A DNA stretch of 64,000 bases from Adineta vaga (GCA_021613535.1 CP075492.1:9114001-9178000), one strand, 5' to 3'; shown: positions 23,301-36,240, counted from the first letter of the stretch. Notes: a model not told the origin generated them from the sequence alone. Program-made: numbers and translations.

Positions 23301-25292
23301 AATGAAAAATTTCATACATCAAGTTCACGAATAATATCTCTCGGACCAATTTGAGAAACATCATATTTGAATCTACCACGATGAGTTAATAAAGCAACTT
23401 CTGCACTATGTATACCAGGTAATTTTCCGATTGAAGTTTCAATTTTTCGTACACATGATGCACATGTCATATTTTCAATCTATAATAAAATCAATCATGA
23501 CGAATCGGTTCGATAGATTTTCAATTGTACATACATTTAAATCGATAACTTCAACGCCATTTTCCATCGTTTCTAGTACTTCAGCACGGAAACCGAGTTC
23601 ATTTACTAAATGAGCAATTTGAGACGGAATGATATATTCGGGATTATATTTGATTTCAGCTTTATTTGACAAAAGAGCCACCAGAACCGAATGAATTCCT
23701 TTTGAATAGATATACATAATTAAGAAAGATGAATATTTTAGAAAGATAAATATTACCTTCAACTTTGCAAAGATTTCGTTGAATGGAATCCACACAACTA
23801 GCGCAAGTCATTCCGATAATACTTAAATAACAAGTTTCAGTATCATCATTATTGACCGGCGATAGTTGAACAAGCGTTTCGCGAGGATTTGATCGTTGAA
23901 TTTTTTCACCTTAAAAAAACATTTCTGATAAAAAATTGATATTTTTGAACCTTGAAACAATGTTGATGTCATGTTTAGATAACTATTTGTATTTACTTTA
24001 ACAATCAATGACATTTTGTTTATCAACTATGTCAATAAATTTTCCTCAAGCAAATATGTAAAACTTTTGTTTTCTTTCATTAAAATTCAAATTGATTATT
24101 GACAGGAATTCCGATCGATTATCAGTAGATAAAACATTATTTGAACAGCAAGAACTGAGTCATCATACGTGATAAGAATTATTCATTTATATCTTAAGAC
24201 GTAATTAAACAAATATTACATGACATAGGAGATTAGAGTATTCGAATTATTTTACGAATTAATCCTTTTGAGAAAGAAAAACAAGGAATCAAGTCTTCAA
24301 TTACCAATATACAGAAAACATAATATCATCTCTCGTAATGTACTTCCTTTGTTCTATATATAATCGATGGTAGTATGTCTGACTTTTTCTTTCTTGTTCT
24401 CCGAAACTAATCGTTGTTTAATACTCGATCCTTTTGACATTTACGATTTGAAAAACGAACCTGATAAGATTGGTGTATTTGAATTTACAATATTTTCTAA
24501 AGAGAAAAAAATATAAGAATGAATTGATTTGATTTTTTCAAGATATTTACCTTTTGATTGATCTGCATCATTCGATGGTATGACTGCTACTTGAAAATCT
24601 AATGATTCAATTTCTTTGATAATAATTGAGAGAATTATGATATTTGGATCATAAAGAATATTTGCTGATTGATCATCGAAGGAAACTTTAATATGATGTA
24701 TACCTGGTAGATCTTCGATAGTTTGTGTAATATTCATTACACAAGAATTACAATGCATGCCTTGTACGCGTAAATAAGCTCGAGCAATATTTTCTAATTT
24801 TGGATTGACTTTATAACCGATTGATTGTATTTTTTGATAAACTGTATAAGGATCTGTTTGATTTTTATCATAAGCAATTAAAACATGAGAACTATCATTT
24901 TTTAAAGGGAAAACTACATTTAAAACTCCGTTAATTGATGAAATACGTTCGGTAGCAGTAGGAATATTCTCATCTGAGATGCCACCAAGCTCAAGATCAA
25001 GGTTATTACTGTTAGTTATTTGATTTAGTTCTGCATTGAAACCGATTGTATTGATATGTTCAATAATATGATTTATATCAATATCATTTGGATTATAAAC
25101 AACAGTTCCTAATTTGTTTTCTAATGAAACCTAAAAAGAAAGAAAAAAAGTCAACTTGAAAGTATTCATCAATATATGATTCACTTGAATAGATTTGATT
25201 CCAGATATGTTACTTAATTTACTTTCAATATTTCGTACGCAACTTTGGCATGTCATACCATCAATATGAATATATTGTGTTAATTCTTCCAT
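20341..25292 (-). CDS. ATP7: Copper-transporting P1B-type ATPase (ATP7A/B family), multi-exon
   Basis: HMA motifs GMTCQSC, GMHCNSC, GMTCASC, NMTCASC; DESLLTGE; [13 protein letters not shown]; DKTGT; SEHPL; TGDN; [10 protein letters not shown]; YN and MALSS in the last transmembrane helices. Confidence 0.97.
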
Positions 25293-25573
25293 AGTTGCAA
25301 ATGACGATGCAATTCTTTTTCTTAGTACTTATGTGATCGCAGTCATTACTTATATATTATAAACATATGAATGATGAAGGAAAAAATTCTCATGAAATAT
25401 GATTGGTTAGAAAAACAGAATTGATTATTTTATTTTCGTGTATATAGATGAGGTAACAATCGTTTAATATGATTGGTTCCCGATAAATGACTAATGAAAT
25501 AATGCCCATCTGATGTAGTAGTGGACAGTAAACGTATTTTTGTTCGTAATATTTGGTAAAATAAAAAGAAATT
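25293..25573. promoter_or_regulatory. Putative bidirectional promoter between ATP7 and VPS41
   Basis: Divergent start codons about 280 nt apart; positional inference only. Confidence 0.55.
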
Positions 25574-28500
25574 ATGTGTCCTGACACAAATAATAATATA
25601 GGTAATGAAAGAGATGATAATAATGATGATGATGATGAAGTCGATGACGAGGAAGAAGAACAAGAAGAGCCTGTATTCAAATACTCGACAATTACAATCT
25701 CTTCTGGACTGCGGAAAGCGAATGATACTACTAAAAATATGCCGGCTGATTTTAGTTGTATTGCTGTTCATGAAAAATTTCTTGTTATTGGAAAAACAAC
25801 AGGTGAAATTTTAATTACAGATCATTTGGGAAATATCATACCACAATATCAAATTAAAGCAGTAAGAATATCTTTTTTGTTACTCAAAGATAGAGACATC
25901 ATATTTTCTAGCATACATATCCCGTCAATGCTATATCTATTGATGATAATGGTGATTATATTGCTAGTTGTTGTCAAGAAGGAAAAGTAAAATTTTGAAA
26001 TGAAATCGATTTCGAATACAAAACTATCGTCTATTTGTAGGTGAAAATTTCTGGATTATTCAGTAAAAATGATGATCAATTAAATGTTTTTTCTCGTCCA
26101 ATTAAAGCTGTTTGTCTTGATCCAAATTTTACGAAAACAAAACAATATGTTACAGGTGATACATCTGTAAGTTTGAATAAATCTTTCTGAAGATGTTCAT
26201 AGAAAAAGTTCTTTATTCAATAGCTCATTCTTAATGAAAGAGGTTTGCTTGGACGGCATAAACAAACAATTTTACTGGATTTAAAAGGTGGACTTATTCA
26301 TACACTTCGTTGGAAAGAATCTTTGATTGCTGTTGCTAATGATCAAGTAATTATCTTATAATAAGAATGTCTTGTTTTTTACAAAATTTATACATATTTC
26401 AGGGTGTAGGTGTTTATGATCTACGTGCTCGTCGATTAGTCGGATTTGAATATAATGATAATCAAGCAGAGTATGATCTTTTCTATGACAAAAAAAGACA
26501 AAAATTCTTTTTTTTATAATTTAATTTAGATTTCCACGTGGTATTTATCCAAGTCGAATATCATGGAATGATCCCATAACATTAGTAACTGCATGTGCAA
26601 AAACTATTAAAATTCTTTCTATTACAAATGAAATATCTAATGATCATCAATCAACAATACCTAAGAAACGCATGAATATAGGTTAGGAGACATTTAAGTT
26701 AGAAAACAAGGAATTTAGATTTTGATGTTTATGTTAATGTTAGTTTTGACATTTAAAATCGAATTTTTTGCATGTGGTTTAACATCAGTCAATCGAGATT
26801 TAGTTTTACTTGGTATTGAAGATTTTAGTAATGCGGTAAGTTAGATCTGTTCTAATATTTTCCTTGAAATATTTATTTATTTCTTCGATCAAGAATGGAG
26901 TAACTGATCCATCGTTAACAGTTTTAAAATCAATTAATAAAAACTATGAAGAAAAAGCTCATGATCCATTTCATATGTTTGGTGATAAAGAAACGGCACC
27001 ATTTCAATTTCAACTCGGTAAAATAGTTTTCAAACGAACAATTAAGTTTTCATTTCAATTTTTTTGTTTCGTTTCAAATAGAATATTTACCAGATGAACA
27101 ATGTTTCTTTATTTTAAATCCATATGATATTGTTAAAGCTGAACATCGAAATTATGATGATCACATCGATTATTTAATCAGTAAGAAAAGATTCGATGAA
27201 GCAATTCAAGCATTTGAAACACCAAAGAATGCTAATGATAAACCTCGACAACATACGAAACAAGTAATAGACATTAGAAAACATATTGTGTACGATATAT
27301 AATTGTAGAGTGTGTATCGAGAATATGTGAAGGAATTGATCGAAACAAAACAGACAGAAAAAGCAGTGAAATTATTTCCAGATGTTTATAAAACAGCACA
27401 AGAATGGGAAGAACAAATACAAAAATTTATTGAACGAAAAGAACTCGATGTAAGTTCAAGTGAAACAAAAACAGCATATGTATTCGTTCATATCGACATA
27501 TTTAGTTTATTGTTCCATACATTCCAATTAGTTTACCTAAATTGGATCCATCTGCTTATGAAAAAGTATTGACTACATATTTAAAAGAGAAGAAATATGA
27601 AGTAAGCTAATCCGTTGTCTTTTTTGGAAATAATGAGAATTTTCTTCGTTTTTATTAGAAACTAAGAGAATTATTAACACAATGGCCATCGGATATTTAC
27701 AATGTAACATCTATTGATCATTTAATACGTATCCAGAGGGATGATGAACGTACACCCAAGACATTACTTGAATGTTCAGCAATATTGTAAGTTGAACATA
27801 AGATTGTTTTCGATTTCTATTCTTTTCTCATTGTAGAGCAGAAAAACAAGGCAACGTAGCACAAACATTGGACATCTATTTGAAGTAAATCGATCTACTT
27901 ACAATACTGCGAAAACATTAGAATCATCGGCTTGTTTCAGTTTAATTTCCTTTTCTCAGCTAGTCTAATTCAATATGGGTTCATCATAAGAACATCGAAA
28001 AAAAGGCAGGATAGATGTTGTCATTTTGTCACAAAAACTGTTCTATCTCAAACTTAGTAAATGGTATTAGGAATCTGATATCACATTGAATGAGACTTGC
28101 TGAGAAAAGGAAAATAAACTGACACAAGCAGATGATTCGATATATTTTCTCAGCGCTGTGCCAACAACATCAAATGCTTTTGTGATTTTTTAGAATGGGC
28201 AATATTCAAGCATTTCAATTGATTGAACGAAAAAAACTTCATGCCGAAATTCTTCCACATATTGAAACACTCATGATAATTAATAAAGATGTTCGTTAAA
28301 TACTCTAAAACTTAAGGATTTCATCTCTATCTATTGTCTGTTCTTCTAGTTAACACTCGACATGTTGGTTAATCATATCGATCAATTACCTGTAAGTTTG
28401 TTGAGAAAACAAATCTTTTAATATTAATTGTATGGAATAGGTAAAATCAGTTCACAATATTCTACAAACCAATCCACGATTTTTACATGCTGTTTGTATA

Positions 28501-29716
28501 AAATCTTGATTTAATGATAAAGTCTTCTTCATTTCTTATATGATTAGTATCTTGATGCGGTATTCTCGAAAAATCCAAGTGATACACGTGATTTTTATAC
28601 ACTTCAAGTCTCACTATATGCTGATTATGCACCAGAGAAATTATTGGGATTTTTACGGAAAGCAGGCGGTTATAATATACAAGAAGCAATTGTGATTTGT
28701 GAAAAGAAAAAATTATATCGTGAAACTGTTTTTCTCTACGGTAGAAAACATGTTTGTTTTGTTTTGAAAAGAAAGAAAATGTGAATGATTTTTACATTAG
28801 GACGTGCCGGAAATGGACGTGTTGCTTTGCAGATAATTCTTAACGAATTAAAAGATATTGAAACAGCAATAGATTTTTGTCGAGAAACAGGTGATCAAAC
28901 TTTATGGCCAATATTAATCGAAGAATCGAAAAATAAACCAGGTAAATAGTACACTTGATAATTTGAAAAATTCTACAGTTCTGTTGTTTAATCAAGATTT
29001 TATCAGAGGTCTATTGAATCATGCTGGTAGTGATGTTAATTTACAAGATCTAATTGATTCAATTCGAACTGATCTACAAATTCCGGGTTTACGAGATTCT
29101 CTTTGTAAAATAATGCAAGATTATAATATTCAGGTAGGATAATTTCAACAGTAAATTATTCTCAAATGTATTGATAAGAAAAATATGAATTTGTTCCTTT
29201 ACTAACGAGTTAGACCGAAGTTTTACGTGTATTCGTATTAAATCATCAGTTTCTAACATTGAATTCATTTATTAGATGTCTCTGTCAGAATCTTGTCGAA
29301 AAATCATCGTTCACGACTGTTTGGGTCTACGCAAGAAGACGATAACATTACTTCAAAGTGGTTATCCAGTCAAAGGTAAGAAGCTACCTCTTTTTTTCTT
29401 CTTTTAATAAATATATCTTTTCTTTGTTCATTAGATACTGATCTATGTGCTAAATGTCACAATCCCGTTTACAGTCCTGGTTAGTTTCATATGTTTTTCA
29501 TAGGAGAGACATACTTTTTAAATAACAAATCTTTTCAGGTATTCTAGCAAATCTTCCAGTATCTGTCTTTTTCTGTTTACATGTCTTTCATGCCAAATGT
29601 ATTGAAACAAATCCTGTAAGAGCAAATGTTTCCTTTCACATCTAAATATTTAACTTTGATATTTTCAGGATGTTTGTGGTGTATGTTCAACTAGTTCTCT
29701 ATTTGGTACAACTTAA
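25574..29716 (+). CDS. VPS41: HOPS subunit Vps41 (WD40 - clathrin repeat - RING-H2), many exons
   Basis: Acidic N-terminus ending EEPVFKY, SCIAVHEKFLVIG, RPIKAVCLDPNF, DDHIDYLI, LYADYAPEKLLGFLR, IPGLRDSLCKIMQDY, C-terminal CAKC...CLHVFHAKC...CGVC; stop 29714-29716. Confidence 0.95.
27900..28160. mobile_element. MITE-like non-autonomous element in a VPS41 intron
   Basis: About 75 bp imperfect terminal inverted repeats (27900-27977 vs 28082-28160), e.g. gaatcatcggcttgtttcagtttaatttccttttctcagctagtct against the reverse complement gaatcatctgcttgtgtcagtttattttccttttctcagcaagtct. No coding capacity; no clear target-site duplication. Confidence 0.75.
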
Positions 29717-30033
29717 TTTCAAAAATGGATTCAACCGAGTGAATTAAATGCTTGTCTTTCTTCTCTTCCGTCCTTATTTATTCACAGTGATTTTTCTTTT
29801 CTTTTGTTCCTCTATGTGTGTGTGTGTAATTGTAACTGAAACTGATTATCCATAGAAAAGAAAACAAACAAATAACAGTAAGAATTGATTGTATGTATTT
29901 CTTCGAACAAACTTGTCGTCTTTTTCTTTAATTTTCGTCTTTCAATTCGATAAGTCAAATGTAAAATGATATTTTTCACAGAAAATTATTTGATGATTGT
30001 ATGTGTGTGACTATTGTTATGTTTATATTTCAG

Positions 30034-31539
30034 ATGGTTTTACTTGGATTTATAGATGAACCAAAAGGAGGAAAGAAGGGCGGTGGTGATGATGATGATG
30101 ATCCATCCAACTGGACTATTTCAAGAATTGGTGGACAACCAGTAAGTTATGAATGCAAAGAGTTTTCTATTTATTCAAAAATGAATTCAATTTAGGCATT
30201 TCCCAATGATATCGTTTCGAATAAATTGAAATCGTCTCTTCATTGTGCAAAATGTCAAAAAGAACAAGTATTTGTCTGTCAATTGTATTGTCCATTGAGT
30301 GGTCATAAATATGATCGTGCTTTGTATCTATTTGCATGTCGAAATTCATCATGTTGGAATGCATCAAATAGGTTTGTTTCGATTGATGTCTTATGAAATT
30401 CATTATTGTAGAAAGAATCGTTTTAGTTGGACTGCAATTCGATGTCAAAAATATGACGAAACAGTTGAAGAAGTTGTTCCAATTGAAACCGAATCATTAC
30501 ATACTGTTCCATTATCATCTACAGATTGGTGTGATGATGCTAATGCTTGGAATAGTGATGAAGAAGAAGAAGATGATCCTAGTCCAAAGAAAAAACCATC
30601 TCCTGCACCACCAATAACAGTGAAAAAAGATATCAAACAAGAGCCGGAAGTTATGCTTAATTCCATGAAAATAGAAGATGAAAATGAAAAATCATCCAGT
30701 GATGATGATGATGACGATGATGATCAAATGGACGTTAAAACGAAAAAGAAGACAAATGAAAAGAATATTTCAGTTGCTTCCTCCGATGCTTTCAATGAAT
30801 GGAAGAAAAGTAATCTAAAGAAACAAGAATTAGATAGTACTACTAGTGCATCATTTCCATTTTGTTACATTGATATTGATGAAGAAGATGTCATTATTGA
30901 TGAGGCGAAATTGAGTGAACAAAAAAAGATGAAAAAATCAATGAAAAAGTTTAATGATGTCGATGAAGATGATGATGATGATGAAACGATGAAAGGTGGA
31001 AAAGAGTAGGTATTTCGTTTGAATTACTGATGAACTCGAATTGATTCTCTCTAGAAAATATGAAAAAACACCAGATATTGAACATGGTGATGTTGTTTTC
31101 TATCGATTCCAACAAAAAATTCGATATGCACCTGATCAAATCATTCGGTAAGAGTTTGTCACTTGAAAATCAACACATAATTTAACTAATCAATCTCTAT
31201 CATACATAGCTACGATTGGTCTGGTAATCCACTCATTCTAACCAAAATCGATAACAATGCATTATCAAGCGTTCAAAAATGTCGTCATTGTCAATCATCA
31301 TGTTATTTCGAGTTTCAACTCATGCCAGCACTTGTGAACTTTCTCAGAATCGATAATCAAATAGGTAAAAAGATCATTCTTTTATAATCCATGAGAAAAT
31401 AAAAGTTCATTTAGGTTTGGAATTCGGCACTGTATTTGTTTATACATGCTCTTCTAATTGTTGGGATGAAACTAATGATTTGTATCGGTTTGAAAATATT
31501 TTTGTTCAAGCTGATCCAGATCAAACTTTATTTGATTAA
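30034..31539 (+). CDS. PDCD2L: Programmed cell death protein 2-like (uS5 chaperone, Tsr4 family)
   Basis: VLLGF...SRIGGQP, CAKC...QLYCPL...DRALYLFAC, acidic middle, KYEK...FYRFQQKI...PDQIIRYDWSGNPL, CRHC...FEFQLMPALV, LEFGTVFVYTCSSNCW; no MYND finger seen. Confidence 0.9.
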
Positions 31540-31578
31540 TAAAAAGAAAGAAAAAACACATCGTTATTTGTTTTTCAG

Positions 31579-32967
31579 ATGATTGAACAATTGATTTTAG
31601 CGTTTTTTGTTCTTGTGATACTTGGACTTCTTGTTCTAAGTGTAAGGATTCAATTCTTTTTCGATAAAGAATACAAATTTCATTGTGATTTTTTCTCATT
31701 TGAATAGACGATCTGTTTATTACGTTCATTTGCAATGGCATCTCGAAGTGAAAATGAAAAACATTATCAAGATCCAAAAACAAAATCTCGAAAACCATTT
31801 CCATCATTAAATGAATCACCTTCAAAATATTTGTCCGTAATCATTCCAGCTTATAAAGAAGTTGATCGTCGTACGAAAAGATACATTTCAATCTTCTTTT
31901 GTTTATTCATTTATTTATCTCTTGATTTTAGTGCCAACGATGATCAAAGATACAATGGAATATTTAGAAAATCGACAGGTTTGTATAAAATATCGTCAAA
32001 CATAGTTTCAACTATTTCTTTTCTTTTAGGCAAAAGATTCCAAATTTACCTATGAATTGATTATTGTTGATGATGGTAGTCCAGATAAAACGAGTGAAGT
32101 AAGAGAAATTCAATGATATGTAAAGTATACAAATGAAATCTTGTTCAGATTGCTCTTCAATACAGTGCTCAATATGGAACAGATATTGTTCGAGTATTAA
32201 CTCTAGATGTTAATAGAGGAAAAGGTGGTGCTGTCCGAATGGTAAGATAGATTAGTTAGAAATTGATATTAATTTCTTGTTTGATTCTTAGGGTGTTTTA
32301 AGTGCTCGAGGTCAATGGATATTATTTGCTGATGCAGATGGTGCTACACAATTTAGTGATTTGACTAGAGTTGAAAAGAGAGCTCTAGATGGAATGAAAG
32401 TAAATAGAAGAAACCATTCAAATGTTTTTGAATTTCATTGAAATTTAGAATGATAATGTTGTTGTTTGTGGTTCAAGACGTCATTTAGAAAAAGAATCTG
32501 TTGCTCAAGTATGTTGATATATTATGCTCTTGATAAACTTAATCAAATTTCTCTTTCAGCGATCACCATTTCGTACATTACTTATGTATGTATTTCATAT
32601 TGAAGTTTGGTTGTTTGCAGTTAAATCTATTCGTGATACTCAATGTGGTTTTAAATTATTTTCTCGTGAAAGTGCACGAACAATTTTTACTCAAATGCAT
32701 GTCGAACGATGGTAAAACAACGAAATAAATCATGATGAACAACTAAATTTATATTTTCTCTTTTCGTTTAGGGCATTTGATGTTGAACTTTTATATATAG
32801 CTGAACAATTGAACATTCCAATTGTTGAAGTTGATGTGAATTGGCAAGAAATTCCAGGATCAAAATTGGATCCATTTACCGCTTCATTTCAAATGGGTAT
32901 TGATATATTAGCTATTTGGTTACGATATACTCTAGGACTCTGGAAAATTCAACGTAAAAATGAATGA
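31579..32967 (+). CDS. ALG5: Dolichyl-phosphate beta-glucosyltransferase (GT2)
   Basis: N-terminal transmembrane segment, LSVIIPAYKEVDRLP, YELIIVDDGS, NRGKGGAVRMG, LFADADGATQF, IRDTQCGFKLF, RWAFDVELL, VNWQEIPGSKL. Confidence 0.95.
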
Positions 32968-33776
32968 AAACAAAAACCATGAAATATATATTTGGGTGAT
33001 TTTTATTGTTAGACGTTTTTGTTATACTTATTCTTGACTATATTATTTTATTTATCATTCAAAATCTGCTTTTAGAAAAAATAAACTTCTTCTTCTTCTT
33101 CTTCTTTTCGAGTAAAATACAATTTTAATAATGAGAATTTGACAGCAAATTGTTTGAAATATAAATTTTGTCAACGAAGAACATGATAATATAAAATTTA
33201 AATAAAAATCACGGAAGAATATTCTCACGTAACTAAATCAACAAGAAAAATGCTCGTAAAGAACTTTTGCACATCTACTTGCGTGTCACTGTCATAGATC
33301 GCTAATTGAAATTTAGTAAATAATCTTCTAAATCAACATGGAACTATATTCTTCTACATAATCTCTGTTTCTCTCTCAAGACTTATCAATCAACCATACT
33401 ATATATATATATTGATATATATTGATATATATGCATATATAAACTCTATTGAGATTCAATCTGTGATAATTCAAAGCGAATCTCTCGTGTATATTGTCTT
33501 TTCAACATATTGATTTTAGACAAAAAAAAAACAAAGTAGAGACATTGTTCTCATGTGAATAATAGATTGGCAAGATCTAATCTTGATTGAGTCAAACAAT
33601 AGAGATATTGTAGACTTAGCGTGCTTTCGAAGTCAAGTTAAATAGGCAGAGATCTCAAATCGTCACACACTCGATTTGAAGAAAAGAAGCGAGGCAGAAT
33701 ATTGATTTTTATTCTACTACGTAGTCGACTGTCTATTGCTTAGTATTCACATTTTTTTCAAGTGAGATATTTCTTC

Positions 33777-36240
33777 ATGGATGCGGATGAATTTCGTCAA
33801 CGAGGAAAAGAAATGGTTGATTTTATTGCGGATTATTTAACAAATATTCGAACACGACGTGTGTTTCCAAATGTTAAACCCGGTTATATGCGTCCATTGA
33901 TTGATAATGAAGCACCAAGACAAGGAGAACCATGGGATCAAATTTTTAATGATATCGAACGAGTGATTATGCCTGGTGTATGTATGAAAATAGATTGTCT
34001 TATAAGTTTAATTGAATTTATTTTCTTATAGATCACTCATTGGCAATCTCCTTATATGCATGCTTATTTTCCAGCATTGAATTCGTACCCATCGATGCTT
34101 GGAGTGAGAAATAGATATTTGACATGAATAGAATTAATTGACATGTACTTTTAGGATATGCTAGCAAATTGTTTAAATCAAATAGGATTTACATGGGTAT
34201 GTGTATTCTAGTCAGATAATAAGATCTATTCTCATGTAATTAGGCATCGAGTCCTGCATGTACGGAATTAGAAACTGTTGTCATGGATTGGTTAGCAAAA
34301 ATGATTGGTTTACCTGATGATTTTCTTCATTCACGTGCTGATACAACTGGAGGTGGTGTAATACAAGTAAGTTAAAGAAATTATTTATGTTTGTGAGAAA
34401 ATGCGTAAATAAAATTCATGATAGACAACGGCATCGGAAGCAACACTGGTAGCTTTACTTGCTGCTCGAAAAGAAGTTATTCGTCGTATTCAAGCCCAAT
34501 TTCCTTACTTAAGTCCTGCAGAAATCAATGGGCGTCTTGTTGCTTATTGTTCTGACCAAGCTCATTCATCGGTAGAAAAAGCTTGTTTAATCGGTTTGGT
34601 GAAACTCAATCTCGTACCAAGTGATGAAAAATTACGTTTACGTGGAAATGCTTTAAGACAAGCAATTGCTAAAGATAAAGAAAATGGTCTTATTCCATTT
34701 TATGTACGTGATAAAACTATTATTAGTATTGAAAGGGAATAATGATTTCTTCTTTGCCTTTTGCAGTTATGTGCAACATTAGGTACAACTGGAGCTTGTG
34801 CATTTGATAATTTAGTTGAACTCGGAGCAATATGTAAGTATTGTGTAGGTTCAATGTGAAGATTATTAGAATCTATGAATAGGTGAAAGAGAAAATATTT
34901 GGATTCATGTCGATGCAGCATATGCAGGAAGTGCTTTTATTTGTCCAGAATTCCGACATTTTATGGATGGAGTTGAATTAACTCATTCATTTGCATTCAA
35001 TCCTTCGAAATGGATGATGGTTCGTTTCAGTTCTTTTGAATTTATTCAATTACATCTCTTAATTTAGGTACATTTTGATTGTACGGCAATGTGGTAAGAT
35101 CGAAGATATCATATAAATCTTCGATAGTTTTGTTTTCTTTGAGGGTTAAAACAAGTGCGGCATTGCATCGAGCTTTTAATGTTGATCCATTGTATCTTCA
35201 ACATGAAAATGCTGGTGTTGCTATTGATTATATGGTAGTAGATTAATATGTCTTTTCTTTTTCTTTCTCTAGTTCTCCTTTAAATTTATTTGTGATCTTA
35301 GCATTGGCAAGTACCATTAAGTCGTCGATTTCGTGCATTAAAACTTTGGTTTGTCATACGTTCATTTGGTATTGAAGGTTTACAAAAACATATTCGAAAT
35401 GTATGTCTTCCTAGTTCAGTATCACTCTCTCTCTATGAATCAAATAAATCATTCTGTTTTTTTTTGTAGGGTGTTCGAATGGGAAGTATCTTTGAATCAT
35501 TTGTTCGAGCAGATGAACGTTTTGAATTACCAGCTGATCGTCATCTTGGCCTAGTTGTTTTTCGTTTGAAAGGTGAAAATGAATTAACCGAACAATTATT
35601 AAAAGAAATCAATAGTGGTGGTTTAATTCATTGTGTTCCAGCATCTATCAAAGGTAAATATATCATTCGATTTACTGTAACAGCAACTTCAACAAATATC
35701 GATGATATCAATCGTGATTGGGAAATCATTCAAACAACGGCAAGTAAAATTCTTCGTCCATTGGATAGTTTAACACCACAAGAACGACGACATAAAATGA
35801 AAAATCTTCATGATGATTTTCGTATGTCACTTGTTCTCTCAAATACGCCACATAGTCCATGTTTAATTAATGGAAGTTTTGCTGCTATACTTCCACTTAA
35901 TACACGGCATATTTATGCCATGACACATGAATTAAGTCAACGTGGATTAAAAAATTCTCTTCTACCAATATCAACACGACGACGTACAAAAAATTTTTCA
36001 GGTCATCGAACATTTTCCAAACAGATGAGTATGGATGGTTATATGATTAACAGTAATCAACAGAAATATTTAATACCAATAACAACAGCATCATTACCAA
36101 TAAGTCGACAAGGAAGTTTAGATTCTCGTATTGAAGAAATTTTAGAGAATAGTACAATTGAAACAAAAGAATTTCTCTCCAAATCACCCCATAGTCATGA
36201 TCAAATTAATAAAATGATTCCAAAAATTGTTAAACAATAA
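33777..36240 (+). CDS. HDC: Histidine decarboxylase (PLP-dependent group II decarboxylase)
   Basis: [53 protein letters not shown] (PLP Lys), [14 protein letters not shown] (Ser where DDC has Gly), and the HDC-type tail [21 protein letters not shown]. Confidence 0.88.

What the first reader, a model, noticed from the sequence alone, without database searches (positions are those of the whole stretch)
25574..32967. Operon-like VPS41-PDCD2L-ALG5 array: 39 nt gap and TTTCAG|ATG acceptors
Seen: the PDCD2L stop (31537-31539) overlaps an AATAAA (31538-31543). The ALG5 ATG follows 39 nt later, directly after tttttcag (31571-31578). That leaves no room for a 3' UTR, a promoter, a 5' exon and an intron. 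The PDCD2L ATG is also directly preceded by tttcag, 317 nt after the VPS41 stop. Known: spliced-leader (SL) trans-splicing occurs in bdelloid rotifers, and in nematodes, tunicates and flatworms it resolves polycistronic transcripts. Inference: this is a polycistronic unit driven by the ATP7/VPS41 divergent promoter and resolved by trans-splicing. I know of no detailed description of operons in this group.
Basis: partly seen in the sequence, partly recalled or inferred. Interest (0 to 1): 0.8.

Follow-up and report, generated by a model that had tools for sequence, protein, structure and literature searches.

The report
Candidate spliced-leader operon in rotifer
In the bdelloid rotifer Adineta vaga the ALG5 gene begins 39 bases after the PDCD2L gene ends, right behind a splice acceptor kept in every bdelloid genome I could examine; this fits a sea-squirt- or worm-style operon cut up by a spliced leader, a layout not yet reported for rotifers, but the RNA test that would prove it could not be run.

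Summary
The window is Adineta vaga. My exon-by-exon ALG5 model equals the annotated A. vaga protein.

The genome carries 42 copies of the published bdelloid spliced-leader exon followed by a GT donor.

The block ATP7(-) | VPS41 > PDCD2L > ALG5 > DDC is kept in Adineta and Rotaria. PDCD2L > ALG5 is kept in seven genomic sequences. The PDCD2L-ALG5 gap is always 34-62 nt and always ends in a pyrimidine tract plus AG directly before ATG.

An old paralogue of ALG5 (A. steineri, R. sordida) has lost VPS41 and PDCD2L. It now sits 115-160 nt behind a rare sequence module that aligns with the ATP7/VPS41 promoter. That module occurs only twice in the 100.8 Mb genome. This suggests that promoter served ALG5 ancestrally.

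Against a single three-gene unit, the VPS41-PDCD2L spacer holds strongly conserved blocks and may contain a promoter of its own.

Verdict: a good, deeply conserved but RNA-unproven operon candidate. The scan has noted the same kind elsewhere in this genome (38 notes). The papers I could search report no rotifer operons.

The parts
25444..25512 (+). Rare composite module in the ATP7/VPS41 divergent promoter: ATAGATG, 20 nt, GATTGG, 25-nt spacer, CCATCTG. A further GATTGG lies at 25401.
   Evidence: It is the only three-motif cluster in the window. The pattern occurs twice in the 100.8 Mb genome, with 0 in the backwards control. It is conserved in A. ricciae and R. socialis. It aligns colinearly with the region upstream of paralogue-B ALG5.
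25574..29716 (+). VPS41 coding region, many short introns. The ATG has no acceptor in front of it.
   Evidence: Pfam matches Beta-prop_Vps41 and TPR_Vps41 (E 1.5e-13) on exons. The C-terminal CGVCS...stop is conserved in relatives. No AG precedes the ATG in three species.
29717..30033 (+). VPS41-PDCD2L spacer, 317 nt, with blocks invariant across bdelloid families. It is the VPS41 3' UTR, a PDCD2L promoter/outron, or both.
   Evidence: Five-species alignment, 64% mean column identity with invariant blocks. Only a weak consensus RNA structure, -6.5 kcal/mol. No Rfam match. Unique in the genome.
30026..30033 (+). 3' splice acceptor directly before the PDCD2L ATG; candidate SL trans-splice site.
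   Evidence: Read. An AG directly before the ATG is kept in A. ricciae, R. socialis and two metagenome bdelloids.
30034..31539 (+). PDCD2L, 6 exons (30034-30141, 30196-30371, 30427-31005, 31055-31147, 31210-31364, 31415-31539), 411 codons.
   Evidence: Exon-level Pfam PDCD2_C. Bdelloid homologues of 376-409 aa. Spliced cDNA contigs of relatives join the same exons.
31538..31543 (+). AATAAA overlapping the PDCD2L stop codon; likely poly(A) signal.
   Evidence: AATAAA or AATGAA lies within 1 nt of the stop in five of seven genomic sequences; the other two carry AATACA-type hexamers in the gap.
31540..31578 (+). The 39-nt intercistronic gap. It holds the conserved ACATCGTT motif (31558-31565) and the acceptor tttttcag (31571-31578).
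   Evidence: The gap is 34-62 nt in seven genomes. A CGTT motif plus pyrimidine tract plus AG is also kept upstream of the stand-alone paralogue.
31579..32967 (+). ALG5 (dolichyl-phosphate beta-glucosyltransferase), 9 exons (31579-31641, 31708-31870, 31932-31978, 32030-32098, 32149-32241, 32292-32399, 32449-32508, 32560-32711, 32772-32967), 316 aa.
   Evidence: The exons tile full-length ALG5. They match P0151 from A. vaga. Only one copy exists in this genome.
32968..33776 (+). ALG5-DDC intergenic region, 809 nt, with conserved blocks. It marks the end of the array; the DDC ATG at 33777 has no acceptor.
   Evidence: AATAAA at 33080 is a likely ALG5 poly(A) signal.

Best explanation
PDCD2L and ALG5 form a spliced-leader (SL) resolved operon of the sea-squirt / nematode SL1 type. 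ALG5 has no promoter of its own. RNA polymerase II reads through from PDCD2L, and probably from the ATP7/VPS41 divergent promoter through VPS41 as well. The PDCD2L message is cleaved and polyadenylated inside the 39-nt gap under the AATAAA that overlaps its stop codon. The ALG5 message gets its capped 5' end by trans-splicing of the 23-nt bdelloid leader onto the acceptor at 31578|31579, which leaves the leader as the whole 5' UTR. PDCD2L is handled the same way at 30033|30034. Shown here: the anatomy, the SL genes, deep conservation of the junction, and the link between ALG5 and the VPS41-type promoter in the paralogue. Inferred: co-transcription, leader addition at these two sites, and where the poly(A) site lies.
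For: (1) Thirty-nine nt between stop and ATG, with AATAAA on the stop and a strong acceptor on the ATG. (2) The genome has 42 copies of the published SL exon followed by GT, against 0 for the backwards control. More than 50% of bdelloid mRNAs are reported to carry this leader (PMC1925144). (3) Gap lengths are 39, 34, 58, 62, 34, 35 and 34 nt, always ending in a pyrimidine tract plus AG|ATG. This holds in A. vaga, A. ricciae, Rotaria socialis and four metagenome bdelloids. Didymodactylos carnosus has the pair annotated as one fused 680-aa protein. (4) Within the five-gene block only the two downstream same-strand genes have AG|ATG. VPS41 and DDC do not, in three species. (5) PDCD2L introns 4 and 5 show no conserved blocks, unlike the true intergenic regions. 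(6) Paralogue B of ALG5 (A. steineri, R. sordida) forms a clade with 83/92 support. It has lost VPS41 and PDCD2L with no remnants. It lies 115-160 nt behind a module colinear with the copy-A VPS41 promoter. The blastn E-value is 2e-7 and 0 of 500 dinucleotide shuffles reach that score. The composite pattern occurs only twice in 100.8 Mb. The same AG|ATG acceptor is kept. (7) Annotators fused VPS41+PDCD2L in A. ricciae and in one R. socialis assembly.
Against: A scan of metagenome and metatranscriptome contigs for the leader joined to the ALG5 start found nothing. The ALG5 cDNA contigs I reached belong to paralogue B and start exactly at AG+ATG. That is ambiguous, because the leader ends in GAG and the acceptor in CAG. 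PDCD2L cDNA contigs stop 10 and 27 nt past the stop codon without a clear tail and without ALG5 sequence. The stand-alone paralogue also has AG|ATG, so the acceptor shows trans-splicing at most, not an operon. The whole block, including non-operonic neighbours, is syntenic between families, so conserved adjacency alone is weak evidence. The VPS41-PDCD2L spacer is conserved like a promoter region.
Confidence: 0.6

Rival explanations
1. Two units. VPS41 is transcribed alone from the divergent promoter. A second promoter in the conserved 317-nt spacer drives a two-gene PDCD2L-ALG5 operon, or a hybrid operon in which both promoters contribute. This is a sub-case of the best explanation and differs only in where transcription starts.
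For: The spacer is 282-328 nt long in four genomes. It holds blocks invariant from Adineta to Rotaria and a GC-richer metagenome bdelloid. That conservation is similar to the two regions that must hold promoters. It is not a repeat or a known RNA, and its consensus RNA structure is weak.
Against: The spacer lacks the ATAGATG / ATTGG / CCATCTG module of the neighbouring promoter. It has no similarity to the region upstream of paralogue-B ALG5. The conserved blocks could be VPS41 3' UTR elements. The paralogue evidence points to the VPS41-side promoter as the ancestral ALG5 promoter.
Confidence: 0.25
2. No co-transcription. ALG5 has its own promoter hidden inside the PDCD2L gene body. Its primary transcript starts within PDCD2L, and the overlapping outron is removed by SL trans-splicing at 31579.
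For: The AG|ATG acceptor is equally present in the stand-alone paralogue with a 750-1300 nt upstream region, so trans-splicing of ALG5 does not need an upstream cistron. From my own knowledge, not tested here: internal promoters are known inside C. elegans operons.
Against: A promoter would have to sit in coding exons, because introns 4 and 5 carry no conserved blocks. The gap stays at 34-62 nt in seven genomes. The paralogue that lost PDCD2L uses a VPS41-type module rather than anything derived from PDCD2L.
Confidence: 0.15
3. Cis-splicing. The acceptor at 31578 receives an ordinary 5' exon from upstream, for example a donor of PDCD2L or VPS41. ALG5 would then be an alternative 3' part of a longer gene or would have a remote non-coding first exon. 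This is the layout that the fused gene models imply.
For: Public annotations contain fused models: PDCD2L+ALG5 in D. carnosus and VPS41+PDCD2L in A. ricciae and R. socialis. PDCD2L exon 1 ends in phase 0, so it could join ALG5 in frame (read).
Against: The D. carnosus fusion drops the ALG5 membrane anchor and the PDCD2L C-terminus, so it looks like a prediction error. Separate 316-aa ALG5 and roughly 400-aa PDCD2L models exist in most assemblies. ALG5 cDNA contigs of relatives begin at the ATG with no upstream exon. The same acceptor works in the paralogue with no upstream gene nearby.
Confidence: 0.05

Closest known systems
Tunicate operons (Ciona, Oikopleura) and C. elegans SL1-type operons
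   Same: Same-strand genes with almost no intercistronic region. The poly(A) signal of the upstream gene lies a few tens of nt from the trans-splice acceptor of the downstream gene. My search found one leader family used for all genes. The genes are unrelated housekeeping genes. The comparison with tunicates rests on established knowledge; PMC1488885 was listed but not read.
   Different: The phylum differs (Rotifera). Leader addition and the precursor are not shown here. The first junction (VPS41-PDCD2L, 317 nt) is much longer than the second.
C. elegans SL2-type operons
   Same: A polycistronic pre-mRNA resolved by coupled 3' end formation and trans-splicing. Linkage is conserved in evolution (PMC1657053, listed).
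   Different: Those operons have an intercistronic region of about 100 nt with a U-rich element and a dedicated SL2 leader. Here the gap is 34-62 nt, and I found no second leader, though I searched only for the published leader.
Chaetognath operons (Paraspadella gotoi)
   Same: The same superphylum (Gnathifera). There, operons are called as genes less than 250 bp apart with a leader on at least one gene, there is no operon-specific leader, and the genes are housekeeping genes (PMC12460157).
   Different: The leader sequences are unrelated. That paper treats trans-splicing and operons as independent origins and gives no rotifer operon data.
Ordinary SL trans-spliced monocistronic bdelloid genes
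   Same: An acceptor lies directly before the ATG and the leader serves as the 5' UTR. Paralogue-B ALG5 looks like this.
   Different: Those genes have hundreds of nt of upstream DNA with a promoter. The A. vaga ALG5 has 39 nt and a coding gene.

Membership tests
SL trans-splicing-resolved operon (general) | Two or more same-strand genes separated by a distance too short for a terminator plus promoter | tested here: met
   The PDCD2L-ALG5 gap is 39 nt, and 34-62 nt in six other genomic sequences. The VPS41-PDCD2L distance is 317 nt, which is not too short.
SL trans-splicing-resolved operon (general) | The organism has SL RNA genes and SL trans-splicing | tested here: met
   Forty-two copies of the published leader exon plus GT donor, against 0 for the control. 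[quoted passage not shown]
SL trans-splicing-resolved operon (general) | The downstream cistron begins at a 3' splice acceptor | tested here: met
   tttttcag|ATG for ALG5 and tatatttcag|ATG for PDCD2L, conserved in all relatives.
SL trans-splicing-resolved operon (general) | The leader is found joined to the downstream mRNAs at that acceptor | not testable with these tools
The pattern scan for the leader plus the ALG5 start found 0 matches. cDNA contigs of relatives break exactly at AG+ATG, which is ambiguous.
SL trans-splicing-resolved operon (general) | A polycistronic precursor RNA spans the junction | not testable with these tools
   No reads were available. One PDCD2L cDNA contig runs 27 nt past the stop towards the acceptor but stops before it.
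SL trans-splicing-resolved operon (general) | No promoter between the cistrons | tested here: inconclusive
   Size rules one out for the 39-nt gap, and PDCD2L introns 4 and 5 are unconserved. Exonic promoters cannot be excluded. The VPS41-PDCD2L spacer has promoter-like conservation.
SL trans-splicing-resolved operon (general) | The linkage is conserved in evolution | tested here: met
   Adineta, Rotaria, Didymodactylos (as a fused model) and four metagenome bdelloids. Caveat: the non-operonic neighbours are syntenic too.
C. elegans SL2-type operon | An intercistronic region of about 100 nt with a U-rich element and a specialised SL2 leader | tested here: not met
   The gap is 34-62 nt. Only one leader family was looked for and found. 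A second leader was not searched for de novo.
Tunicate / SL1-type operon | The poly(A) signal of the upstream gene lies within a few tens of nt of the downstream trans-splice acceptor, with a single leader | tested here: met
   AATAAA at 31538-31543 and the acceptor AG at 31577-31578. The same holds in A. ricciae and three metagenome contigs. The actual cleavage site was not observed.

The most novel reading that the evidence does not exclude
VPS41, PDCD2L and ALG5 are one ancient transcription unit fired from the ATP7/VPS41 divergent promoter. It would predate the split of the bdelloid families and the bdelloid genome duplication. After that duplication, one copy deleted the two upstream cistrons and left ALG5 directly on the same promoter and the same trans-splice acceptor. 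This would be the first documented rotifer operon, with a natural deletion experiment showing that the downstream cistron depends on the distal promoter.
Probability: 0.35. Interest if true: 0.75.

Novelty: new member of a known kind. Interest (0 to 1): 0.6.

Why it matters
Operons resolved by spliced leaders are known in nematodes, tunicates, flatworms and chaetognaths. For rotifers the searchable literature says none has been reported (PMC7986045) and my searches found none.

If confirmed, bdelloids would add an independent case, and one close to the chaetognaths. That bears on two questions: whether operons follow whenever a leader exists, and whether they help recovery from arrested states. 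The second is relevant to animals that survive drying.

It matters for annotation too. Three public bdelloid assemblies fuse these neighbours into single false proteins.

The paralogue comparison offers a way to find the promoter of an operon from genomes alone.

Tried and rejected
- **Second copy in this genome.** I searched for a second ALG5 or PDCD2L copy in A. vaga and found only the window itself.
- **Unusable protein hits.** P0001 is not on record as a gene product. P0002 sits on a short contig that lacks the junction.
- **Leader scan.** A scan of metagenome contigs for the leader's 3' end joined to the ALG5 start gave 0 hits.
- **Rfam.** A search over 25200-33800 gave only two chance-level matches.
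- **Spacer structure.** The consensus RNA structure of the conserved spacer is weak, -6.5 kcal/mol with almost no covariation, so I dropped a structured-RNA reading.
- **Spacer against paralogue B.** Comparing the spacer with the region upstream of paralogue-B ALG5 gave only short chance matches.
- **DSBA-like gene.** The gene that precedes paralogue B has no counterpart in the window.
- **Second genomic copy of the module.** The site at C6:10641289 has no related genes within 12 kb downstream or 5 kb upstream, so it is not the lost A. vaga copy B.
- **Bacterial promoter/terminator scan.** It gave counts equal to shuffles, as expected for a eukaryote.
- **General promoter type.** I rejected the idea that the three-motif module is a general bdelloid promoter type, because it occurs twice in the genome.


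Full report
**Observation.**
- The PDCD2L stop TAA is at 31537-31539 and is overlapped by AATAAA at 31538-31543.
- A 39-nt gap follows (31540-31578). It ends in tttttcag, and the ALG5 ATG is at 31579.
- The PDCD2L ATG at 30034 directly follows tatatttcag, 317 nt after the VPS41 stop (29714-29716).
- TTTCAGATG occurs twice on the + strand of the window, at exactly these two starts, against 0.42 expected.

**Gene models.** I built the models by eye and checked them exon by exon, always by reference. The full-length proteins I used are database records returned by the tools.
- Pfam finds PDCD2_C on PDCD2L exons 5 and 6.
- It finds Glycos_transf_2 on ALG5 exons.
- It finds Vps41 beta-propeller and TPR on VPS41 exons.
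- It finds HMA on the minus-strand ATP7 exon.
- It finds Pyridoxal_deC on the next gene, DDC.
- The nine ALG5 exons tile a full-length ALG5. They match P0151, 'I4U23_013658 [Adineta vaga]', 316 aa.
- The ALG5 N-terminus MIEQL... is shared by all bdelloid homologues, so 31579 is the real start.

**Organism and leader.** The window is G000:C3:9114001-9178000 of a 100.8 Mb, six-contig genome. The top protein hit names Adineta vaga. The 23-nt rotifer leader is listed in Table 1 of PMC3795323. Followed by GT, it occurs 42 times in the genome with one mismatch at the first base, against 0 for the backwards control. One copy read out shows the exon followed by GTAAAT. PMC1925144 states that bdelloids of two families put this leader on more than 50% of transcripts.

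**Reads.** My later protein searches by window reference, the Rfam search, the own-genome DNA search and two DNA patterns used letters of this stretch. I had no stated reason to avoid them.

**Conservation of the junction.** Through database ALG5 and PDCD2L proteins I fetched relatives' loci.
- A. ricciae carries ATP7(-) | VPS41+PDCD2L (annotated as one fused gene) | ALG5 | DDC.
- Rotaria socialis, in four assemblies, carries ATP7(-) | VPS41 | PDCD2L | ALG5 | DDC.
- Four metagenome bdelloid contigs carry PDCD2L > ALG5.
- Didymodactylos carnosus has a fused 680-aa PDCD2L+ALG5 model.
- The stop-to-ATG gaps are 39, 34, 58, 62, 34, 35 and 34 nt. Each ends in a pyrimidine tract plus AG directly before ATG.
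- AATAAA or AATGAA lies within 1 nt of the stop in five of the seven.
- A motif ACATCGTT, or at least CGTT, sits 11-25 nt before the AG.
- The PDCD2L ATG also follows an AG in all five species.
- The VPS41 and DDC ATGs follow no acceptor in three species.
- Caveat: the whole block is syntenic, so adjacency alone is not specific. The constant tiny gap is.

**RNA contigs.**
- ALG5 cDNA contigs L010 and L011/L012 start exactly at AG+ATG; in L010 this follows adapter sequence. L013 starts inside the coding sequence.
- The leader ends in GAG and the acceptors in CAG or TAG, so these two bases cannot be assigned. A contig break at that point fits two RNA forms diverging there, but this is inference.
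- The tree puts these contigs in the paralogue-B clade, so they do not speak for the operon copy.
- PDCD2L cDNA contigs are properly spliced. They end 27 nt (L023...acatcgttg) and 10 nt (L024, A-rich) after the stop. Neither shows a clear tail or ALG5 sequence.

**The paralogue as a natural deletion.**
- A. steineri (L015, L016) and R. sordida (L021) carry a second ALG5 followed by DDC. It is preceded at 754 and 1308 nt by a DSBA-like gene, not by PDCD2L.
- The tree groups these with other Rotaria and environmental sequences (support 83/92). Both genera appear on each side, so the duplication is older than the Adineta-Rotaria split.
- There are no remnants of VPS41 or PDCD2L upstream, yet the ATG still follows ...ttatag or ...tccag.
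- The two copy-B upstream regions share a 93-nt block (E 1e-14).
- That block aligns colinearly, in the same orientation, with the ATP7/VPS41 promoter of copy A. The shared order is GATAGATG, about 20 nt, ATTGG, about 25 nt including AC.AAT.AA, then (G)CCCATCTG.
- For A. vaga against R. sordida, blastn gives E 2e-7. For R. socialis against R. sordida it gives 2e-5. Of 500 dinucleotide shuffles, 0 and 2 respectively reach those scores.
- The composite pattern occurs once in the 64 kb window and twice in the whole genome. The other site has unrelated neighbours.
- So this is not a general promoter type, and common descent is the simplest reading.
- The ancestral layout would then be promoter - VPS41 - PDCD2L - ALG5 - DDC. 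In copy B the two upstream genes were deleted, and ALG5 kept working behind the same promoter and the same acceptor. This is what an operon predicts, although an internal promoter lost together with PDCD2L would also have forced this outcome.

**The VPS41-PDCD2L spacer.** It is 282-328 nt long. It is conserved in blocks across five species, about as well as the ATP7/VPS41 promoter and the ALG5-DDC intergenic region. PDCD2L introns 4 and 5 are not conserved. The spacer has no Rfam match, little consensus structure and no other copy in the genome. It may hold VPS41 3' UTR elements, a promoter for PDCD2L, or both. This is the main reason I keep the three-gene unit at roughly one in three.

**Mechanism proposed.**
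1. Transcription starts near 25520-25570, and possibly also in the spacer.
2. The polymerase reads through.
3. Cleavage and polyadenylation occur under AATAAA, within about 35 nt of the ALG5 acceptor.
4. The leader is trans-spliced at 31578|31579. The leader contains no ATG, so the ALG5 AUG is the first one.
5. The same processing happens at 30033|30034 for PDCD2L.

The CGTT motif is kept in copy B, where no upstream 3' end is needed. It therefore more likely serves the acceptor, for instance in the branch region, than polyadenylation.

**Known systems and novelty.** With its near-absent intercistronic region the junction resembles tunicate and C. elegans SL1-type operons. It does not resemble SL2-type operons. 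PMC7986045 (2021) says operons have not been reported in rotifers. PMC12460157 (2025) describes chaetognath operons and mentions rotifers only in a list. My other searches found nothing. The scan itself holds 38 notes on operon-like clusters in this same genome, some said to have RNA support. I did not test those loci. They do not count as evidence here, but they show this locus is one of many.

**Verdict.** This is a real, deeply conserved, operon-like pair with new comparative support for a distal promoter. It remains unproven at the RNA level.

Noticed in passing
window 27921-28138: Inside a long VPS41 intron lie two 57-nt arms, 89% complementary, 104 nt apart. This is a long hairpin or a MITE-like insertion. 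Rfam gives only a chance-level hit there.
   Followed up: partly
window 29717-30033: The VPS41-PDCD2L spacer has blocks invariant across bdelloid families (for example CCGAGTGAA, TTCCGTCC, ACTGATT, TTGATTGT, TGATGATTG). It is unique in the genome, has no Rfam match and has a weak consensus structure.
   Followed up: partly
window 33266-33327 and 33547-33625: The ALG5-DDC intergenic region holds a block of about 60 nt and a second block of about 55 nt plus TTAGCGTGC. Both are nearly identical in A. vaga, A. ricciae and Rotaria socialis. They are probably DDC regulatory DNA.
   Followed up: no
G000:C1:2551158-2551338; C5:9884354-9925971 and others: Many spliced-leader RNA genes lie in head-to-head pairs with starts about 156 nt apart. 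They cluster on contig 5 (9.88-9.93 Mb and 10.91-10.93 Mb).
   Followed up: no
L014 2340-7966; L019 1143-7942; protein P0296: Public annotations fuse the neighbours: VPS41+PDCD2L as 1241 aa in A. ricciae and 1192 aa in one R. socialis assembly, and PDCD2L+ALG5 as 680 aa in Didymodactylos carnosus. These are likely prediction errors caused by the tight spacing.
   Followed up: partly
L026 (minus strand) 850-990; L027 780-1120: In two moss-metagenome bdelloid contigs the junction is intact, but the ALG5 exon 2 region has in-frame stops and then runs into unrelated A-rich sequence. This is either a decaying copy or an assembly chimera.
   Followed up: no
G000:C6:10641289-10641352 (minus strand): This is the only other genomic match to the ATAGATG / ATTGG / CCATCTG composite pattern. 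No homologue of any gene of this locus lies within 12 kb downstream or 5 kb upstream.
   Followed up: partly
It may be a second junction of the same kind in this window. I did not look at it.
   Followed up: no
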